From contig OZ281496.1 in the NCBI GenBank assembly GCA_965637545.1, positions 28,768,001 through 28,832,000 of the forward strand: a DNA stretch of 64,000 nt, read 5' to 3'. The notes beneath the pieces are model-generated. The model did not search any database. It was not told the origin of the DNA and saw only the letters and a list, made by a program, of their open reading frames with translations. This document shows, one piece after another, positions 21,861 to 60,841 of the stretch. This DNA comes from Phallusia mammillata. Its lineage: Eukaryota. Every line of letters begins with the position of its first letter. Positions within the stretch are counted from its first letter, which is position 1. The position numbers and the translations under genes are program-made.

Positions 21861-23913
21861 GACAAGCACGCACGGTCTTACTGTCGGCACAAGTGGACAA
21901 GTGGTTACTGCAGTGGGTGCAAATGGGTTTAAATTCGCTGACCAGTTCAGGTAGGCTTTGAGCAGAGTTTGTTAAGATTAGGCACTGTTTGACAAACAGA
22001 TAGCAGGCGTTTCAACGACAAGCAGTTTTGTTATGATTAATCTGTAAAACAGCGCTGACCTCCGCTCTATGCACGCAGTTTTTGCAAACAGTTAATGTTT
22101 TGTTCCCATACAAATGTTTACATATTGTACGACTTGTTTTATATTTACGGGTAGTTTTCTGCACCTGTTAACTTTGAGGCCAGAGCAAACCAAATAGTGT
22201 AAGACAGAATATCACATTTCTCATTTAAAACTTGGTTTAGAGTCAACAGAACTGAAGGAAAAGTTTAAAGATCTAGCGTGTGAAACAACTTGCAGATGTA
22301 ATTTAACCGGTACCGGTAGTGAACTATACGGATGTTGGATGTATTTAAACATGCAACATGCGTGTCTTGCTACAATAGACAGCCAGAAATCTCTCACTAA
22401 AACCATGCTGGTTAAAAATGTCCAAATAACAATAATGCGACTAAGTTGTCCGAAATAACACGACAGTAATGCGACAAATTTGTCTGGAAAGTACCAAGCA
22501 AAATATATTGTAAACGTTGATGGAAAATTGCAGTTGGCAACACAATGTTTTTAGTTTGTACTAACTTACAAAAGCAAGAGAAAATGTACTCATTATTCTT
22601 CTGATAAACAGACCATGACCTCCGCATTGTCTCCTTTGGAGCAAATACTACAGACAGCTGGTCTTGTGCGTTAAAAAATGGAAAATATCGCTATTTACAC
22701 CCTACATGAGCGACCATATTGACATTACAAACAGCACCAGTGTTGTAAAAATCGAAACGTGAGTAATTTGTAAAGACTTTAACTTAACTTAAAGCCAAGC
22801 CTAACAGAAATGCTCGTTTAAATTCCTTTCCAGCAAGTTGTGTAACAATTGCACAAAACCTCGTCGTTATGACCTTGACCCAAGTTTGACCTTCATGTAT
22901 CAAATAATAGCTGCCAAACTAGTTCGAAAAAAACTAGTGCAACAAGATACTAAAAATAATAGCGTGGAAATTGTTAAAACGCAGGTAATTCGACAAAATT
23001 TGGTTAAAACACCTCTTTACGCTGCGCTGAACCCGAAAACAATTATTTGAAACCCGGGTTTCCTCTCGCATTTTTTACGCTTAACCAACTTGCGTAGTCA
23101 AGCACCAGAATCGCGCACTTAATCAGAGGTATTTTGACCAGACAAAGCAAATTCCAAACACCGAAAGATCGGTTGAGTAACGTTTGAGTTAGGAGCTCAG
23201 CAAGATGTTAGCAAAGTTAAGCTCCTGAAGGAATAGGTAATCAACACCGGGGTACAGAAATAGCGATCTGCTTATGAATCACAGGAAGACAAAAAACATT
23301 TTCACGTTGAAAATTTATGATGACACCAATAGTGCAAGGTGTTAGGAAGTCCAAACTTTTATAGAAAGACGACAAATTTTACAGAAATTTCATTATTGTC
23401 GTGAAATTGTTTAAGATTGCTTCGATAATGTAACAAACAGTGACAAAAATTTACAAACTAAATAATGCTCTTCTGGCAAATGTATTTCTTTAGCTGACGT
23501 TTCAAATTTAGGTCGTATTAATGAGCGTAATAACACACAAACGTCTGTTTAAAACCTTAGGTAAAAACCTTTTTATAAAAACTTGAAACGCTATGGCCAC
23601 ACAACAGAAAACATGATCCATAAAATCAGCAACAAACAATGGGCTAATCGTTTATAGCCCAAGGTGATCGAAAACCTTCGCAATTGCTGTGAAAATGTCA
23701 AAAGAATATTTGATAAACTAATAACCGTATTTCCTTACAAGGTGGCCCAGAAAGTTTTCATTCTTTTTTTATATATTTAGATTCAAAATGAGAATTTAGT
23801 TGTGACCTATTGTTATGATTAGAATACTATAACCATGTGCTTTGTTTTGTTTCACTTCTTACAGAAGGCTGAATATTGTGTACCATATATTTTGTTACCA
23901 TAATCGAACTAGT

Positions 23914-26073
23914 ATGCCTCGCGGAGTTTTAGCACTGGCGTTGTTTGCCGCCATCTTGGCATTGTATGTACAACAAACATCGGCCGAATCTTCCGAGCTT
24001 CAGCGGGAAAAGGACAAGCAAGTTTCCGTATTTAAAGGTATTTTTCGTCTGTATACTAACTATCGAAATTCAGTCAACGTACAACTAAACATACTAGTCA
24101 ACACTACTTAAAAGCGGGTTACAAATAACCACACGCCCAGACTATTAAGATAAAATCGCAATACGATTTTGCTGGGTGCTGCAGATTACAAAAAGGATAC
24201 GCACACTGTACTTTAAATTATATTTTGCTAAACACCTCAAAGTTAAACTGTTACAAGATGGCGGTTACAAGGAACTTATTAGAGTGAATGGGTATTGTAA
24301 GTGTAAACGCCATGAAAGTGAATATCGCCATTGTCAATTTTTTATAGGCCGACATGTTCTAACACATTTCTTCTCTGACAAAATCTATAATCATGTCCGA
24401 AAAATTTTTATCGGGTCCATACAAGATGACTTACTTATTAAAGTATAAAATGCACGCACTTACAATAAACACCTGTTGTCCATAGGAGAAAGATTGGACT
24501 TTGGCGAACAGCTGCATCACATTACAAAACGAGGCATCTCACGAGAAGTAAGTTGAAACTTAAGCTACATAAGTCAAGTCATTTGCGAAAAACATCGTGC
24601 AAGTTTTTGGTGAAAGAATATTACTTGATGTTATCAGACTGTTCAATCGGATTTAGGAACACCTTGAAAGATTTATCGGGCAACGATAGTTGGCTCCAAG
24701 CAGCGGTTCTCAACTTTTTTTACTTTGCGACCCAGAGCTTTTCTAACACAACGCGACCCCTTTACAAACACATAGAAGTTTTACTATACACGAGAATGTG
24801 ATCAACATATATTTACTATTCAATGTCACTGTAACAGTTCGCATTTTTGCTCTGCAAGAAACCCTTAAAATGTGGTTATGCCTCACGTCAATTTTAAAAT
24901 TTTGCAAGAAAAGCCGAAAAACACATTCTTAGAAGTATTTAATGGCAAATGATGTCGTGCTAATTCTAAATAAAACAGTCGTGTGAGTTACTAAACTTTA
25001 AAAGCTTGGCGTGAGCTAAGATATTGGGCAAAGGTTTCGCAGATCGGGTTCGGGAGTGATTCTGGTCTTACGTCAAAACTCTTTATCACTTTGTGTCACA
25101 ATTTCACGAACTTTCGGGCCTATTTCGGGATTTGTTTTATAAAAGATATTTGGGTTCGGGTCCCAATTTCACGCCTGCTGACAACTGTGCGACAGAGTTA
25201 GTCAAGTATATCGAAAAAAATCAACCAAAGCAATCGAGAGAGTTCCAACGTTTTCTAGTGCGTGAAATATGTTGGAAATTAAAATAACAATACTCTCATG
25301 TTATCGTTGTTGGTGGCAAACAGCGACCAAGCACATCAGCTTACGTTGACAAACGTTTCAATGAATGAAAAAAGTAATAAAGTTGGGGATTTAAAAACAA
25401 CTGCGATGTACTTGGCGTAACATACCTTGCAAATTAAAGAAGTGTTTCATCGGTCGAATAGGCTTAGAACTAAAGTTTTCTACCCACAAGGATCCTTTTA
25501 ATGAAACAAGCTTTCTTTGAACTTTTTGTTGCGGCGCCCGCTTTATAAATACGCTTTTTGTCAACATAAACAGAATGAGTTCTTGTATGGGTGCATATTG
25601 CTCATCCAGTGTTACAAAGCCCCTAGTGGCGGACGTTTCTTTATTGTAAACGCTTAATAAGTGAATTATTTAGCTGGCTATTGGTACCGTTGATAAACAT
25701 TGCCTGTTGTTTATTTGGACGTACACAATGCGACAAAAATGCTAAGTCACAAACGTTTTTTACAGAAGCGCAACCGACGTAATGTGATCAGAAAAAGACG
25801 AAACAAAAGACTCTGTCCAGGATTTTTCTGCAAACTAGCTTCGTGTAGGGCGGTGCGGGGTCACTGGCGTAGTAAGTCATTAATTTATATGTAGTCATAT
25901 TAGGTTACATGGATTTTTATACATGCTGAACAACTAGTTAGGTTAATTATTGAGTCATTGGTGTTGTGCTATCTGGTACATTGTACAGGTTTGAATTAAC
26001 AGTGTATTTTGTAGAGCGATGCTTACGTTGTCGCGTACGTTACTGCCAAGGAGGTGATGTGCTGCCAGCCTGA
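23914..26073 (+). CDS. Secreted prepro-peptide (116 aa) with a cationic six-cysteine C-terminal domain; turgencin-like antimicrobial peptide candidate
   Basis: Exons 23914-24037, 24486-24547, 25766-25871 and 26015-26073 (GT-AG, phases 1/0/1, 351 nt) give MPRGVLALALFAAILALYVQQTSA-ESSELQREKDKQVSVFKGERLDFGEQLHHITKR-GISREKRNRRNVIRKRRNKR-LCPGFFCKLASCRAVRGHWRKRCLRCRVRYCQGGDVLPA*. It has a signal peptide, a pro-region, convertase sites and six Cys. Confidence 0.8.
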
Positions 26074-27472
26074 AACCTACAACTATTCCATGCAAGTCAA
26101 ATCATACGCAGGCCGAAAGTCAAATGTAAAAAATCGTAGAAATATTTGTAAATACCACATACTGTTTAAACAGGAAACGACGATAAACACTTTCAGTCGT
26201 TTATTTACATTTCTTGTGCTTTCAAACGTTTCTGTAATTTAAAATATGGCTTTAACAAAGAGTTGAATCTTGGGCCTAAGTTTCGTGAAGCGTTCCAACA
26301 TTGATAATGGGTTCGAATCCCACCTCAGACTGGAATTCGTTTTGTACTGTTTAAGTTGAATTAAAGCCCTTATAATGTGAAAAATGGCTTGAACAGACTT
26401 GAATAAATTTTTTTATACGTTGTTGATACACAAATGTTCACTTGTAGTCTTGCCACACACCGATTCATGTCACTATAGCATGAAAACGACAATGATGTCA
26501 TTTTTTAAAGAAATTAACATCGTCTAACAAAAATCCTTCAGCACCCATTGTGTTCTTTTTGCTGATGTACTATTGTTGACTTATTTTACACAGAAACGCA
26601 GCCTTGCAAATGTACTGTAATTTAAACAATAATATGCTTCTATGCCTGAAGTGAAACATTTCTTGATAACTATACTATTTCGATTTTCAATTTATCACGT
26701 AGTCGCCGGTTTTGCCCGCTTTATGGGGTTTGTGTTTGTTTGTTTAGTGCTAAACTACAGTAAACTTGCATGAGTGAAAGACGTATGTCTAAACCGTTCT
26801 TAAATTCGCCATTGTTTGTTCAAGTGTGCCCACACATGTTTCTGTTAATAAACACACAATTTTTTGTATTCGTGTTTGTTGTTTCCCTAATAGGACGGAA
26901 AAAAAAACACAAGGTAAAACGGTCGGTTAAGTTAAATGATAAATCCAAAAACAGTTTGTATGCGCGTTTAGAGCATGTGTTGGGTTTGTTTCCTATAAAT
27001 ATGTCCCCAAGATGGCCAATTGGTCAGTGCAATTGCCTTGTGCGGAAGAGTTAGCAGGTGACATGTGTGCCTCGCTACAACATACAGCCGAAAATGTCTC
27101 GCTTGACAACGTGCTGGTTCAATTTCGGCGAAACACTATGCGTACTTATCAGTGCAACAAAAAAGGCCAAGCAAACTAGCCTTTAAATCACAAACTAAAG
27201 ATGCTTTGAGACTCGAACGTATAATATAGTATGATTCGGTATAGCGCCTTCAATGGCCCTGGCGTACTGTGATGTATAATATAGTATAATATAAATAGTA
27301 TAATATAATATAGGGGCTCGATAACACCATCAAGTGTACAATGTGAAAGCCTGTGGTAAAAACCGACAAGGCTCTTCGCCGATAATTGACCCATGAAGTA
27401 AGCCCTAATGTTTCCTTTAGGTTTTGACAAATCCAAACCTCGCTACAACGTTACAAATCAGATCAGTAAGTA

Positions 27473-32600: not shown

Positions 32601-33777
32601 GATCAAATGTACAAAATGCAATCCAAAACACTGAATACCTCAATAGAATTTCCATAGCATTCTTTTTTGCCATGTTGGCATGAAAACTTGTATGAGCCAT
32701 CATCTTGTTTTACGTACTACACACAAAAAAGTGATTAACAGACAGGTGCTACTGCCGGAAAGTGGTACAACACAAGGAAATGTATCCATACATCAATAGT
32801 ACTAAATTTAAGGAAGTTGTGGTTTGTCACAGGACTAGCATATGTCCAACTGGCCGATATTGTGCCAACAAGTGCTGGACTTTTTAATAGTTTTGTCACT
32901 TTCGACTAGTTATCATATTGAAGTGGGTGACAAAGATTTGTTTTTCCCTGCAATGTTTAATTGCTCCGTACTGATGTGTGTACAAATGTTAAAAATTTAC
33001 TGTTTTTATCACAAGACCACAGGAACCGCTGCAAACTATTGATGCATCCCACAACATTGACTTGGAAAATCAAACACTAAAGATGTAATTTTTAAATATT
33101 AGATCTAGTTTATAGAAAATGCAAAAAATATTTAGATCTACACACACAAATTTGCATTTGGAGAAGTTTATCAGACAAAAATGTGAATTCAAGCAACTTA
33201 CGAAAGCTTTCCCAAAGGGTACAATCTTAACATTCATAATGCCAGTGCTTTCCAACTTTTCCCATGTTGGATAAAGCATTGTGGTAATAAAACGAATTGA
33301 ATCTGGGCAAAGGGATTCAAAGTAAACATCAACTTGAACTGGAGCATCACTGGCCATAGGGAAAAGTCTATTGGCACATGCACTAAGAACCTGTAAAATA
33401 TTTAAAATGCTTCAGCATTTGTCATCATAGAATGTATTTTCATAGCTTAAAGTCAGATGCTGGCTTGTTGCAGTCTAGAGGTTAAGATACAATAACTGTG
33501 GTTAACTTTTATTCTCTGTAAGTCTAGATACCTTATTACTTTAAAATAGTAAGATTAAATTGGTTAACATTTGCACACAAAAATCTATTAAATTTTGGTT
33601 TACATTTGGTTTTTGGCAGTGAAGTACAGGTAAAGATGCTAAAATTTAACAGATACTTACTCCACATTTTTTTGCCATTGAAAAGCTGTCACACCAAAAT
33701 CTGGGAGCAACTTTGCACTCACTAGCAAAGGCACATGTAGCCACAGCACTCAACAGGATAATGAATTTCAAGGACAT
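29633..33777 (-). CDS. IFI30: Gamma-interferon-inducible lysosomal thiol reductase with an N-terminal saposin-A-like motif, 258 aa, 7 exons
   Basis: Exons 33661-33777, 33202-33390, 32639-32716, 32057-32155, 31697-31843, 31002-31070 and 29633-29710 (all phase 0, 777 nt). Signal peptide, CKVAPRFWCDS..AKKC, active site VYFESLCPDS, GILT signature CQHGKKECYGN, and WVPWIVING. Confidence 0.95.
30015..30231. mobile_element. hAT (Charlie-like) MITE, 217 bp, in the last GILT intron
   Basis: Same family as 14799-15000; TIR CAGTGGTTCTCAAAC; perfect TSD CCCTAACC (30007-30014 and 30232-30239). Confidence 0.92.
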
Positions 33778-56753: not shown

Positions 56754-57686
56754 TTAGTTTAAAGTTGGGCTTGAAATAACGTGTATTGTTGTTGACCGAG
56801 AACGCCTGGGTTTCCGTTTTGCAAACGGCGCTTTGAGTATTTTCCGCCACGAAGTAAAAGAGAACAACAAGGTTAGAAGGTTTATTACTAAATTCACGTC
56901 ATACAGAGTGACCGTAACGTGACGAGTGGCGTTCCCGGGAACGACAAAAGCGAACAGGATCAGAGCTATGAAGTCGGTAGCAACACACACAGCGGCCAGA
57001 ATAGCTGAGCGGCGTATAATGCTAAATACAGGCCTTGACTCAACCGCTTGTGACCGTAGAGGGTAAATAAACAGGAACAGCATCAACCCCTGTCCGAACA
57101 TCATAAGGCAAGTGCTAAAGTATGTTGGCCACAGCTTGAACTCCTCTACGGGCTTTGCGATGCATCCTCGCGACGAGTTCAGGTAGTTGTTAGGAAACGC
57201 ACTTGCAAGACAGCTAAATGACAGCCCCACTAGCATCAAGACCATGGCACTTAAATCCACCCAGAAAAGCCAAGGCTTACGGACTGCCTCCAAAGCCGGG
57301 TGTTGGTACAAAGCTTTCTGCCTGAACCACAGGAAAAAGTACCAAGCCGTGCCGGCAATGTAAAATATTACAGTTGCTACATCCATCAATATCTCACAGA
57401 GCAAATTCGAATCGTCGAAGTAGCCCGCATTAAAGACGAATTGGCCACTAAGCAGTCGGATGCAACCCATAGCGTACGCCACCACTGCTGAAGTGTAAAC
57501 GGGCCCCGCGCTAAGCTGCAAATTGCTGCTTTTTGTCCATTTGCCACAACGTACTCCATGTACAATAAAAGCAATCTCAATGTAAACTATGGCCAACAAG
57601 GCTGCTATATTACATGCCTCAGCAACAATCCATTCTGTTTGTTCAAAACGTCCGTTAAAGTCCTGTGACGAAGCGCTGTCGACCAT
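56754..57686 (-). CDS. Orphan intronless seven-transmembrane (GPCR-like) protein 1, about 310 aa
   Basis: Single ORF from ATG 57686 with seven hydrophobic segments. Cys at the top of TM3 (LCE) and in ECL2 (RGCI); WFRQ at the DRY position; paralog of 59885-60841. Confidence 0.85.
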   Translation of the reverse strand: MVDSASSQDFNGRFEQTEWIVAEACNIAALLAIVYIEIAFIVHGVRCGKWTKSSNLQLSAGPVYTSAVVAYAMGCIRLLSGQFVFNAGYFDDSNLLCEILMDVATVIFYIAGTAWYFFLWFRQKALYQHPALEAVRKPWLFWVDLSAMVLMLVGLSFSCLASAFPNNYLNSSRGCIAKPVEEFKLWPTYFSTCLMMFGQGLMLFLFIYPLRSQAVESRPVFSIIRRSAILAAVCVATDFIALILFAFVVPGNATRHVTVTLYDVNLVINLLTLLFSFTSWRKILKAPFAKRKPRRSRSTTIHVISSPTLN

Positions 57687-58634
57687 TTTGCACTCGTGAT
57701 AGTGAAAATGCAACCTGTCCTTTACATTCTCAATGATTTTTAGGACTGTGATGTGCTAAATACAGACGCACAATGCAGCAACAAAGTTCACAAACCTGTC
57801 TTCCCCTACACAAAAATGCTGTCCTCTGATTGGCCTTCCACTGACCCCCCGCCTAAGTTAAAACTTGATAATTTAAAGATGTAATACGTCATGTGTGGTA
57901 TGAGCTCAGGTAGCATCGTATGCAAATTTAAAACACATAATTCGATAAAGCGACCCAAACACTTCGGGAGTGCTATTATTAGGACTCAAAATATACGCTT
58001 CCTGCTTTTCTAATGATGCTTCTTTTTAATGATTGGTTCCATTAAGAAAACACCCATCCTGGACATCTAACAATCTTCCGATAAATCTCAATACAGCAAC
58101 AATAGTAACAAAAATAAGCTATTGCTGTCAGGCATAATATCCAGTTAATAGTGACAAATGTTCTGACAATTTTAAAGTACAACTTCAAGGCCATATATAG
58201 GTTATGTTGTATTTCATCAACAAAACCCAATATATAGCCTACGTATAGATATAGGCCGTGAATTTAAATCATCTATTGTAAGTGACAATGTAGGAACCAA
58301 AGGTGACAACTAAATGGTAAACGTTGCGGCCTGTTTACGTAAAAGGACAAAAAAAGTTTTTCTGCAAATATCTGCAATGTCACCTTCTATACTAAACTTG
58401 ATTACGAATTACTAATGTTGTTTAGGCCATCCACGCCATCAATATTAAACGCCCTAAACGCCCCTAAATTTTTTTTTGGACAGTAATTGTTTCATGTGAA
58501 GGTATCGTTTCCGTGAAAACGTTGTATTCAAAGGCAATAAGCGTTGCGTCGTTTTCCACTTCCTTGTAAAATGACGCACAGAGGTTGCACGCTGGACTTC
58601 TTGTTGCAAACGGTGTTTATACTTGATGCGTATA

Positions 58635-59884: not shown

Positions 59885-60841
59885 ATGTCTACCAACGAAA
59901 CTAACTTCAACACAACGTTCACAAGTCGCTTCGAAAATCCACTATGGATAGCCGCAACCTGCGTCAACATTTTGTCGATCAGCTTCCTGACTTGGATTGT
60001 GACTGGATTTATAATGTATGGAAAACGAAAGGGCAAGTTCGCCAACTTGAAAGCAAGGGACACTTTGAAGCGGCACGGTGGAATCGTTTTTCTTTCTGCT
60101 TTGGTAGCATTTGTTTGTTGCTACTCAGTTCTGTTCCTGAATATAGCATTCTATAATGCTGGCTTTGGAAGTTTAGACACAAGACCATGTGAAGCGCTCA
60201 TGGACGCTGTGTTTGCCTGCTACAAATGCTCTGCTTTTCTGATACTGTTGTACTACTGGCTGCGTCAGCGTGCTCTTTACCAAAACCAGGTAATGGCCGA
60301 TTTGGCTCAGAAATCACGAGTACGTTTTTTCACCTGGGCAGCATTATGTATCCTCATTGTCGGTTTTACAGTCGAAATAATATCATTTACAATTCCAAAA
60401 CAAGCCGCAACGAATGGTAACGGCTGTGCAACACTACCCTTCGGCCAAATTATCCTTTGGCCATTTTACATTTGCCTTACAGTGTTTTTCACAGGCCAAG
60501 TAATCATGTTAGGACTTTTTGTTTACCCACTTAGACAGCAGTCGCAAGGCAAAGCGTTCAATCGTAGGCGAATAAATTCACTTTACAAACGAAACGCTAT
60601 GCTAGTGATGTTTACAATCATTTCCAATATAATGTCATTTGTTTTACCAGTAGTGGTGCCATTTGGTAGCACCATACATGGCCCAGAAATGTGGTTTGAG
60701 ATAAATTTGATGTTGATTGCTTTATCAGTGGTCTTGTCATTTACGGATAGATGGAAGATACTATTTCCGTGCGGCGGTGTCAAAGAAAAACAGCAAAAAG
60801 TGCAAGTAGCTTCTGCAGGCACCGTTTCTACCAACGTTTAA
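59885..60841 (+). CDS. Orphan intronless seven-transmembrane (GPCR-like) protein 2, 318 aa
   Basis: Single ORF with N-terminal sequons NET/NTT and seven hydrophobic segments; PCE / NGCA Cys pair; WLRQ; C-terminal STNV. Confidence 0.87.
   Translation: MSTNETNFNTTFTSRFENPLWIAATCVNILSISFLTWIVTGFIMYGKRKGKFANLKARDTLKRHGGIVFLSALVAFVCCYSVLFLNIAFYNAGFGSLDTRPCEALMDAVFACYKCSAFLILLYYWLRQRALYQNQVMADLAQKSRVRFFTWAALCILIVGFTVEIISFTIPKQAATNGNGCATLPFGQIILWPFYICLTVFFTGQVIMLGLFVYPLRQQSQGKAFNRRRINSLYKRNAMLVMFTIISNIMSFVLPVVVPFGSTIHGPEMWFEINLMLIALSVVLSFTDRWKILFPCGGVKEKQQKVQVASAGTVSTNV

What the first reader, a model, noticed from the sequence alone, without database searches (positions are those of the whole stretch)
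23914..26073. Hidden four-exon gene for a turgencin-like cationic six-cysteine peptide precursor
Seen: four small exons, never joined in the ORF track, splice in frame via GT-AG sites into a 116-aa protein. It has a signal peptide, a pro-segment, a polybasic linker ending in the furin-type site RNKR, and the 39-aa domain LCPGFFCKLASCRAVRGHWRKRCLRCRVRYCQGGDVLPA (6 Cys, 9 K/R, 1 D). Knowledge, recalled from memory and to be verified: turgencin A from the ascidian Synoicum turgens is a roughly 36-aa helical-hairpin antimicrobial peptide with nested disulfides and contains CKLATC...GGWKCKLC. This peptide has CKLASC...GHWRKRCLRC and a similar spacing (C-x4-C-x4-C-x10-C-x2-C-x4-C). Inference: a new tunicate host-defence peptide, possibly showing the precursor and gene architecture of a family known mainly from isolated peptides. 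Cleavage at ITKR would instead give a 59-aa hyper-basic form starting GISR.
Basis: partly seen in the sequence, partly recalled or inferred. Interest (0 to 1): 0.88.

Follow-up and report, generated by a model that had tools for sequence, protein, structure and literature searches.

The report
Expressed sea-squirt six-cysteine cationic peptide gene
The four small exons are a real, transcribed and correctly spliced sea-squirt gene for a secreted precursor that should release a 39-residue, strongly positive, six-cysteine peptide. It looks like a host-defence peptide, but kinship with the turgencins is only weakly supported and its activity is untested.

Summary
Observation confirmed. Exons 23914-24037, 24486-24547, 25766-25871 and 26015-26073 join in frame into a 351-nt CDS of 116 aa.

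Expression:
- Assembled cDNA contigs from three runs of three separate studies carry exactly these three GT..AG joints. A DNA run carries none.
- One contig begins with the ascidian spliced leader joined at the AG at 23863-64, so the mRNA is trans-spliced and its 5' end is known.
- The first ATG of the mRNA opens the ORF.

Protein:
- Signal peptide 1-24.
- Neutral pro-piece 25-57.
- A +10 linker 58-77 holding four overlapping R-x-[KR]-R sites.
- A 39-aa C-terminal peptide: net +8, about 4477 Da with three disulfides, Cys spacing 4-4-10-2-4.

The gene is single-copy in its 240-Mb genome. No relative appeared in Pfam, PDB sequences or the protein libraries, but these were searched exon by exon only.

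The turgencin link is weak:
- Similarity to turgencin A is marginal (p=0.027 with Cys fixed).
- There is none to turgencin B (p=0.78).
- The spacing, both shared motifs and the amidation signal all differ.

Best reading: an orphan, convertase-processed, cationic disulfide peptide, most likely host defence. A signalling ligand remains a serious rival.

The parts
23863..23864 (+). AG acceptor for spliced-leader trans-splicing; the mRNA body starts at 23865
   Evidence: the X4 contig carries 24 loose letters in front of 23863. They end in the first 14 letters of the 16-nt ascidian spliced leader, and the last two (AG) coincide with the genomic AG. The leader sequence is confirmed in PMC1488885. 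A pyrimidine tract precedes the acceptor.
23865..23913 (+). 5' UTR, 49 nt, with no upstream ATG
23914..24037 (+). Exon 1 coding part: signal peptide (residues 1-24, 23914-23985) and the start of the pro-piece; ends in phase 1
24038..24485 (+). Intron 1 (GT..AG, 448 nt)
   Evidence: joint in X1, X2 and X4, absent in DNA run X13.
24486..24547 (+). Exon 2: rest of the pro-piece up to K56-R57 (ends at 24532) and the start of the basic linker
24548..25765 (+). Intron 2 (GT..AG, 1218 nt), holding a dispersed repeat at about 24700-24993
   Evidence: joint in three runs; depth spike in the DNA run over 24704-24820.
25766..25871 (+). Exon 3: polybasic linker with overlapping R-x-[KR]-R sites (up to R77, 25808-25810), then the first half of the Cys domain (C1-C3) from L78 at 25811; ends in phase 1
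25872..26014 (+). Intron 3 (GT..AG, 143 nt), phase 1. It splits the codon of K98 in the loop between Cys3 and Cys4.
   Evidence: joint in three runs.
26015..26073 (+). Exon 4 coding part: second half of the Cys domain (C4-C6), a short tail and TGA at 26071-26073
26074..26675 (+). 3' UTR. Contigs end at about 26317 (X4), 26465 (X1) and 26675 (X2). Poly(A) signals ATTAAA at 26360 and AATAAA at 26402.

Best explanation
This is a real single-copy ascidian gene. Shown: its pre-mRNA receives the spliced leader at the AG at 23863-64 and loses three GT-AG introns. The first ATG of the mRNA opens a 116-aa ORF. Inferred from the sequence: signal peptidase cuts after Ala24. In the secretory pathway, furin or PC-type convertases cut within the linker at four overlapping R-x-[KR]-R sites (residues 61-77), the last being RNKR77. 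This frees the C-terminal 39 residues (L78-A116). That peptide has net charge +8, pI about 10 and a mass near 4477 Da with three disulfides. Inferred function: a disulfide-stabilised cationic peptide that binds anionic microbial surfaces or membranes, that is, a host-defence peptide. In sequence terms it is an orphan. It may be a very distant relative of the turgencins, but it cannot be filed with them.
For: The gene and its splicing are shown. Identical spliced contigs come from three studies and no joint appears in the DNA run. CDS GC is 0.49 against 0.36 in the introns, and the ORF is the first and longest in the mRNA. Trans-splicing rests on the leader found on the X4 contig, the published leader sequence and 3179 leader-plus-GT copies in the genome against 0 in the control. 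The precursor layout is given: a hydrophobic 24-aa N-terminus with a T-S-A cleavage motif, four overlapping furin-type sites, and a +8 six-Cys C-terminal peptide. This layout resembles hepcidin and LEAP2 precursors (my own knowledge). The gene is lineage-restricted and has no detectable relatives, as is usual for fast-evolving defence peptides. Earlier notes on this genome report many other small cationic peptide genes.
Against: No activity, tissue or induction data exist. The RNA runs are coded, so the expressing tissue or stage is unknown. Contig depth is modest (6-12). The gene is single-copy, whereas defence peptides often sit in clusters. The pro-piece is neutral rather than anionic. Signal-peptide and cleavage calls rest on inspection, not on a trained predictor. 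The fold and disulfide pattern could not be predicted because the joined domain was not submitted. The homology searches had low power because they used 20-41-aa exon pieces.
Confidence: 0.5

Rival explanations
1. It is a true member of the turgencin family: a helix-loop-helix peptide with nested C1-C6, C2-C5 and C3-C4 disulfides. It would then reveal for the first time how such peptides are encoded.
For: It comes from an ascidian and has six non-adjacent Cys. It shares a C-K-L-A-[ST]-C loop and a G-x-W-[KR] element before Cys4 with turgencin A, and the C4-x2-C5 spacing. The alignment score against turgencin A exceeds Cys-preserving shuffles at p=0.027. The two outer spacings (C1-C2 and C5-C6) are both 4 here and both 3 in the turgencins, as nested pairing would allow. 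The turgencin genes are unknown, so precursor features cannot contradict this.
Against: There is no similarity to turgencin B (p=0.78). The best local alignment to turgencin A pairs only 4 of the 6 Cys. The spacing differs in three of five loops. The motifs CxMAC and KKxGG are absent and there is no amidation signal. The p-value is post hoc, for one comparison picked from memory. The C-terminal half has beta-type rather than helical amphipathicity.
Confidence: 0.2
2. It is a secreted signalling peptide, a hormone, neuropeptide or embryonic cue, released by convertases and acting on a receptor.
For: The signal peptide, dibasic and furin sites and a C-terminal disulfide-locked peptide are the standard prohormone layout. 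The gene is single-copy. It is found at low to moderate depth in 12 runs of three studies. One library shows a template-switch oligo tail, typical of low-input embryo or single-cell work (my own knowledge).
Against: No orthologue was detected, although Ciona proteins are in the library. A +8 charge with arginine-rich amphipathic stretches is unusual for a receptor ligand. No receptor or tissue data exist.
Confidence: 0.22
3. The basic linker is not removed. A 59-aa form (from G58) or the whole 92-aa pro-form acts as a polyanion or metal binder, for example on sulfated tunic or egg-coat polysaccharides.
For: The 59-aa form would carry net +18 and pI 11.7. There is a dibasic K56-R57 site ahead of it. 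Ascidians are rich in sulfated glycans (PMC10609765 abstract).
Against: Four overlapping optimal furin-type sites lie between residues 61 and 77, so survival of the linker in the secretory pathway is unlikely. No Pfam match to any binding domain was found (exon by exon).
Confidence: 0.06
4. The transcript is real but the ORF is not translated, or it has no function.
For: No protein-level evidence and no detected homologue.
Against: The ORF is the first and longest in the mRNA, in a good start context with A at -3. Exon GC is 0.49 against 0.36 in introns. The layout is a coherent signal, pro-piece, cleavage sites and six-Cys domain. The only CDS difference seen between individuals is synonymous (26061 G>C, third base of Val113).
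Confidence: 0.02

Closest known systems
Turgencins A and B (Synoicum turgens; PMC7024374)
   Same: Ascidian origin, 35-39 residues, cationic, six non-adjacent cysteines and C4-x2-C5. The C-K-L-A-[ST]-C loop and the G-x-W-[KR] element are shared with turgencin A.
   Different: The Cys spacing is 4-4-10-2-4, against 3-4-8-2-3 and 3-4-7-2-3. There is no CxMAC or KKxGG motif and no amidation signal. The peptide is arginine-rich rather than lysine-rich. There is no similarity to turgencin B. The disulfide pattern and activity are unknown here, and the genes and precursors are unknown there.
Three-copy cationic six-Cys peptide family of the same genome (G000:C3:2806297-2842704; earlier notes s1-399059 and s1-399078)
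   Same: Secreted, strongly basic, six Cys split 3+3 by a phase-1 intron in the loop between Cys3 and Cys4, C4-x2-C5, and a Trp shortly before Cys4.
   Different: Those genes have three exons and no pro-piece or furin linker. Their spacing is 3-3-11-2-5 and they carry long basic C-terminal tails. There is no significant sequence similarity (p=0.12-0.42) and no cross-hit in genome searches.
Hepcidin and LEAP2-type precursors of vertebrates (my own knowledge, not tested here)
   Same: A small prepropeptide made of a signal, a pro-piece, a polybasic furin site and a C-terminal disulfide-rich cationic peptide.
   Different: Different Cys number and framework (8 and 4 Cys), no sequence similarity expected, and a different exon count.
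Beta-hairpin arginine-rich peptides such as tachyplesin, protegrin and gomesin (my own knowledge)
   Same: The stretch around C4-C6 alternates Arg with hydrophobic or Cys residues and has a high beta-type hydrophobic moment (up to 0.99).
   Different: Those peptides have 17-21 residues and four Cys. Here this is only half of a 39-residue, six-Cys domain.

Membership tests
Turgencin family | Six cysteines, none adjacent, in a peptide of about 35-40 residues | tested here: met
   Cys at positions 2, 7, 12, 23, 26 and 31 of 39. Family definition.
Turgencin family | Cys spacing 3-4-(7/8)-2-3 | tested here: not met
   One search gives 4-4-10-2-4. The turgencin spacings were read from the sequences.
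Turgencin family | The motifs CxMAC and KKxGG, stated by the authors as common to A and B | tested here: not met
   The first loop has four residues with no Met-Ala, and the hairpin loop has no KKxGG.
Turgencin family | C-terminal amidation (the precursor should end in Gly, with or without basic residues) | tested here: not met
   the ORF ends in Pro-Ala followed by the stop.
Turgencin family | Sequence similarity above chance to the known members | tested here: inconclusive
   p=0.027 against A and p=0.78 against B with Cys fixed. A against B gives p=0.013.
Turgencin family | Disulfides C1-C6, C2-C5 and C3-C4, with a helix-loop-helix-like fold | not testable with these tools
   The joined domain has no reference, so it was not folded. 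The hydrophobic moments do not favour a helical second half.
Turgencin family | Antibacterial activity | not testable with these tools
   Needs peptide synthesis and MIC assays.
Convertase-processed secreted prepropeptide | N-terminal signal peptide | tested here: met
   Arg3, a 15-residue hydrophobic core, Thr-Ser-Ala before residue 25, and GRAVY 1.30. This is by inspection; no trained predictor was available.
Convertase-processed secreted prepropeptide | R-x-[KR]-R site directly before the presumed mature peptide | tested here: met
   sites at 61-64, 64-67, 71-74 and 74-77.
Spliced-leader trans-spliced ascidian mRNA | The leader sequence at the cDNA 5' end, joined at a genomic AG, with leader RNA genes in the genome | tested here: met
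   one contig, X4; published leader; 3179 copies, with a tandem array of 553-bp period.
Beta-defensins | Cys5 and Cys6 adjacent (framework C-C-C-C-CC) | tested here: not met
   four residues separate Cys5 and Cys6. The framework is from my own knowledge.
Any Pfam domain (ShK, defensins, vanabin and others) | A match to the family profile | tested here: inconclusive
   no family at E up to 10, but each exon was scanned alone, so each profile saw only half a domain.

The most novel reading that the evidence does not exclude
This gene, the three-copy cationic family at C3:2.8 Mb and the turgencins may be branches of one old ascidian superfamily of six-Cys hairpin peptides. Each would be built from two three-Cys half-domains on separate exons, split by a phase-1 intron in the hairpin loop, with C4-x2-C5 kept throughout. 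If so, this locus gives the first gene and precursor architecture for a peptide class so far known only from purified material.
Probability: 0.15. Interest if true: 0.7.

Novelty: new variant of a known kind. Interest (0 to 1): 0.5.

Why it matters
Ascidian cysteine-rich defence peptides are known almost only as purified molecules. The authors of the turgencin paper say that relationships can only be settled once the genes are characterised, and that their attempts to build a cDNA library failed. Here we have a transcript-verified gene in a laboratory ascidian. It has a defined precursor, predicted cleavage sites and a mass to look for. That makes both the chemistry (fold, disulfides, activity) and the biology (where and when it is made, knock-down) directly testable. 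If the kinship holds, it gives a template for finding turgencin genes. If it does not hold, this is still a new six-Cys framework.

Tried and rejected
Protein searches, exon by exon, all blank:
- Word-indexed search with the exon-1 frame and the exon-3 frame: no candidates.
- The exon-4 frame was too short for that tool.
- phmmer of exon 3 against 1.84 billion representatives: 0 hits.
- Pfam and PDB sequences: nothing.
- ESM Atlas features for exon 3: no usable hit.
- Metagenome contig scan: 583 pattern hits, none a relative.

Control: an intronless 7TM ORF from the window finds a Ciona intestinalis protein at 26% identity and a Logan protein at 40%, but no identical entry. So tunicates are in the library, but this species' proteome is not. 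The blanks are therefore weak evidence.

Paralogue hunt in the own genome:
- Each exon hits only itself.
- The DNA pattern for C-x4-C-K-[LF]-A-[ST]-C gave 3 other hits against 1 in the control. The C-x3-C version gave 1 other hit.
- On inspection none of these has a basic or Cys-rich context, so I rejected them as chance.
- No second such exon lies in the 64-kb window.

Kinship with the C3:2.8 Mb six-Cys family was tested and is not significant.

Literature: no paper in the library gives a turgencin precursor or a six-Cys Phallusia peptide.

Left out on purpose: every search, fold or complex prediction with the joined 116-aa or 39-aa sequence, which has no reference. The joined sequence was used only inside local scripts built from window.fa.

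Full report
**1. The observation**

The sequence at 23700-26300 holds the four exons as described.
- Exon 1 is 23914-24037: 41 codons plus one base, donor GT at 24038.
- Exon 2 is 24486-24547: acceptor AG at 24484-85, and it ends in phase 0.
- Exon 3 is 25766-25871: 35 codons plus one base, donor GTAAGT.
- Exon 4 is 26015-26073: its first two bases complete the Lys98 codon, and TGA lies at 26071-73.

A local script built the CDS from window.fa and gave 351 nt, 116 residues and no internal stop. CDS GC is 0.49 against 0.36 in the introns.

**2. Expression and splicing**

Twelve runs labelled as probable RNA, from three studies of one organism, hold about a fifth of the sampled words of a 2.5-kb query. 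That is what exons plus UTRs would give. Two DNA runs hold nearly all the words.

I laid three RNA runs from three studies, and one DNA run, on 23300-26800.
- Each RNA run has one contig that skips exactly 24038-24485, 24548-25765 and 25872-26014, all GT..AG.
- The DNA run has no such joint.
- Each exon occurs only once in the genome, so a processed copy cannot explain the contigs.

The model is therefore transcript-verified base for base.

The X4 contig carries 24 further letters in front of 23863. They look like a template-switch oligo tail (my own knowledge) followed by the first 14 letters of the 16-nt ascidian spliced leader. The leader's last two letters coincide with the genomic AG at 23863-64. 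That leader is the published Ciona one (PMC1488885). The genome holds 3179 copies of leader plus GT, against none in the reversed control, including a tandem array with a 553-bp period.

So the mRNA is trans-spliced, its body starts at 23865, and the 49-nt 5' UTR has no ATG. The 116-aa ORF is the first and the longest in the mRNA. The 3' UTR runs to about 26465-26675, with poly(A) signals at 26360 and 26402. No RNA contig covers 23300-23862, so there is no close upstream gene on this strand in these runs.

**3. Anatomy of the protein**

| Residues | Part | Properties |
|---|---|---|
| 1-24 | Signal peptide | Arg3, 15 hydrophobic residues, Thr-Ser-Ala before the cut |
| 25-57 | Pro-piece | Hydrophilic, net charge 0, ends in Lys-Arg |
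| 58-77 | Linker | Net +10, four overlapping R-x-[KR]-R sites at 61-64, 64-67, 71-74 and 74-77 |
| 78-116 | Presumed mature peptide | 39 residues, 2 K, 7 R, 1 H, 1 D, net +8, pI about 10, 4477 Da average with three disulfides, Cys spacing 4-4-10-2-4 |

- Intron 3 is phase 1 and splits the loop between Cys3 and Cys4, so each three-Cys half sits on its own exon.
- The second half alternates Arg with hydrophobic or Cys residues. Its beta-type hydrophobic moment reaches 0.99, while its helical moment stays at 0.1-0.6. This does not speak for an amphipathic second helix.
- An Arg-Lys-Arg stretch lies in the loop just before Cys4. Cleavage there would give a two-chain disulfide-linked peptide. This is only a possibility.

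**4. Relatives**

The joined 116-aa and 39-aa sequences have no reference, so they were sent to no search, fold or complex tool. They were used only in local scripts.

All exon-wise searches were blank:
- the word-indexed protein search;
- phmmer against 1.84 billion representatives;
- Pfam;
- PDB sequences;
- Atlas features;
- metagenome contigs.

A control with an intronless ORF from the window found a Ciona intestinalis protein at 26% identity and a Logan protein at 40%, but no identical entry. Tunicate proteins are therefore present, but this species' proteome is not. With 20-41-residue queries the blanks carry little weight.

In its own 240-Mb genome the gene is single-copy. Pattern hits for the C-K-[LF]-A-[ST]-C loop turned out to be chance. 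No second such exon lies in the window.

**5. The turgencin comparison**

It also gives the family's features:
- six non-adjacent Cys;
- spacing 3-4-8-2-3 in turgencin A and 3-4-7-2-3 in turgencin B;
- shared motifs CxMAC and KKxGG;
- C-terminal amidation;
- nested disulfides and a helix-loop-helix-like but unstable fold.

The present peptide shares the Cys count, the C4-x2-C5 spacing, the second loop (three of four residues identical to turgencin A) and a G-x-W-[KR] element before Cys4. It differs in three of the five spacings. It lacks both motifs and has no amidation signal.

I ran a permutation test that keeps the cysteines fixed.

| Comparison | p (Cys fixed) |
|---|---|
| This peptide against turgencin A | 0.027 |
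| This peptide against turgencin B | 0.78 |
| Turgencin A against turgencin B | 0.013 |

The best local alignment to turgencin A pairs only four of the six Cys. The comparison was also chosen after the fact, so this is a lead and not evidence of membership.

One point in favour is that the two outer spacings are both longer by one residue, as nested pairing would permit. The two hosts belong to different ascidian orders (my own knowledge). Weak similarity therefore does not exclude common descent.

**6. A possible wider pattern**

Earlier notes on this genome pointed to a cationic six-Cys family 26 Mb away on the same chromosome. I fetched it and read three copies.
- They are three-exon genes in which the signal peptide is followed directly by the peptide.
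- Their spacing is 3-3-11-2-5.
- They too have a phase-1 intron in the Cys3-Cys4 loop, C4-x2-C5 and a Trp just before Cys4.

Sequence similarity to the present peptide (p=0.12-0.42) and to the turgencins (p=0.36-0.73) is not significant. The shared architecture is suggestive only.

Some of those notes name the organism as Phallusia mammillata. I did not test that. What I can show is an ascidian with the Ciona-type leader that is not Ciona intestinalis itself.

**7. Verdict**

- The precursor reading (secretion, convertase cleavage, a 39-residue three-disulfide cationic peptide) is well founded but inferred.
- A host-defence function is the most likely single reading, at about one half. A signalling ligand is a serious rival.
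- Membership of the turgencin family is not shown, and several defining features were tested and not met.
- The gene is best described as an orphan six-Cys cationic peptide precursor with a Cys framework that matched no family in the searches run here: a new variant of a known kind.

Noticed in passing
G000:C3:11108338-11147465 (outside the window): A tandem array of spliced-leader RNA genes with a 553-bp period. The genome holds 3179 exact copies of the 16-nt leader plus GT, against none in the reversed control.
   Followed up: partly
window 24700-24993 (intron 2): A short dispersed repeat. DNA-run depth jumps from about 110 to 2656, and contigs from other loci, RNA ones included, match 24734-24778.
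   Followed up: no
window 23448-23504: A short high-copy element that matches contigs on both strands. Depth is 685 against about 116. It lies about 360 nt upstream of the trans-splice acceptor.
   Followed up: no
window 33070-33357 (-): An ORF whose first 57 residues or so match the Pfam GILT family, a lysosomal thiol reductase (E=6.6e-13). It is probably the first coding exon of a neighbouring gene, about 7 kb downstream on the other strand.
   Followed up: partly
window 59885-60841 (+) and 56754-57713 (-): Two intronless ORFs of 318-319 aa, which another reader noted as orphan 7TM receptors. The + copy is 26% identical to an uncharacterised Ciona intestinalis protein and 40% identical to a protein from a Logan transcript contig.
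   Followed up: partly
window 26061, 26320-26350, 26408 and 26464: Differences between individuals or runs. There is one synonymous change in the CDS (G>C, Val113) in DNA run X13, several 3' UTR substitutions, and a 6-nt insertion after 26464 in X2.
   Followed up: no
G000:C3:2806297-2842704 (L012, L013, L018): Three copies of a three-exon gene for a secreted, very basic six-Cys peptide with spacing 3-3-11-2-5. A phase-1 intron sits in the Cys3-Cys4 loop, the same placement as in the gene studied here.
   Followed up: partly
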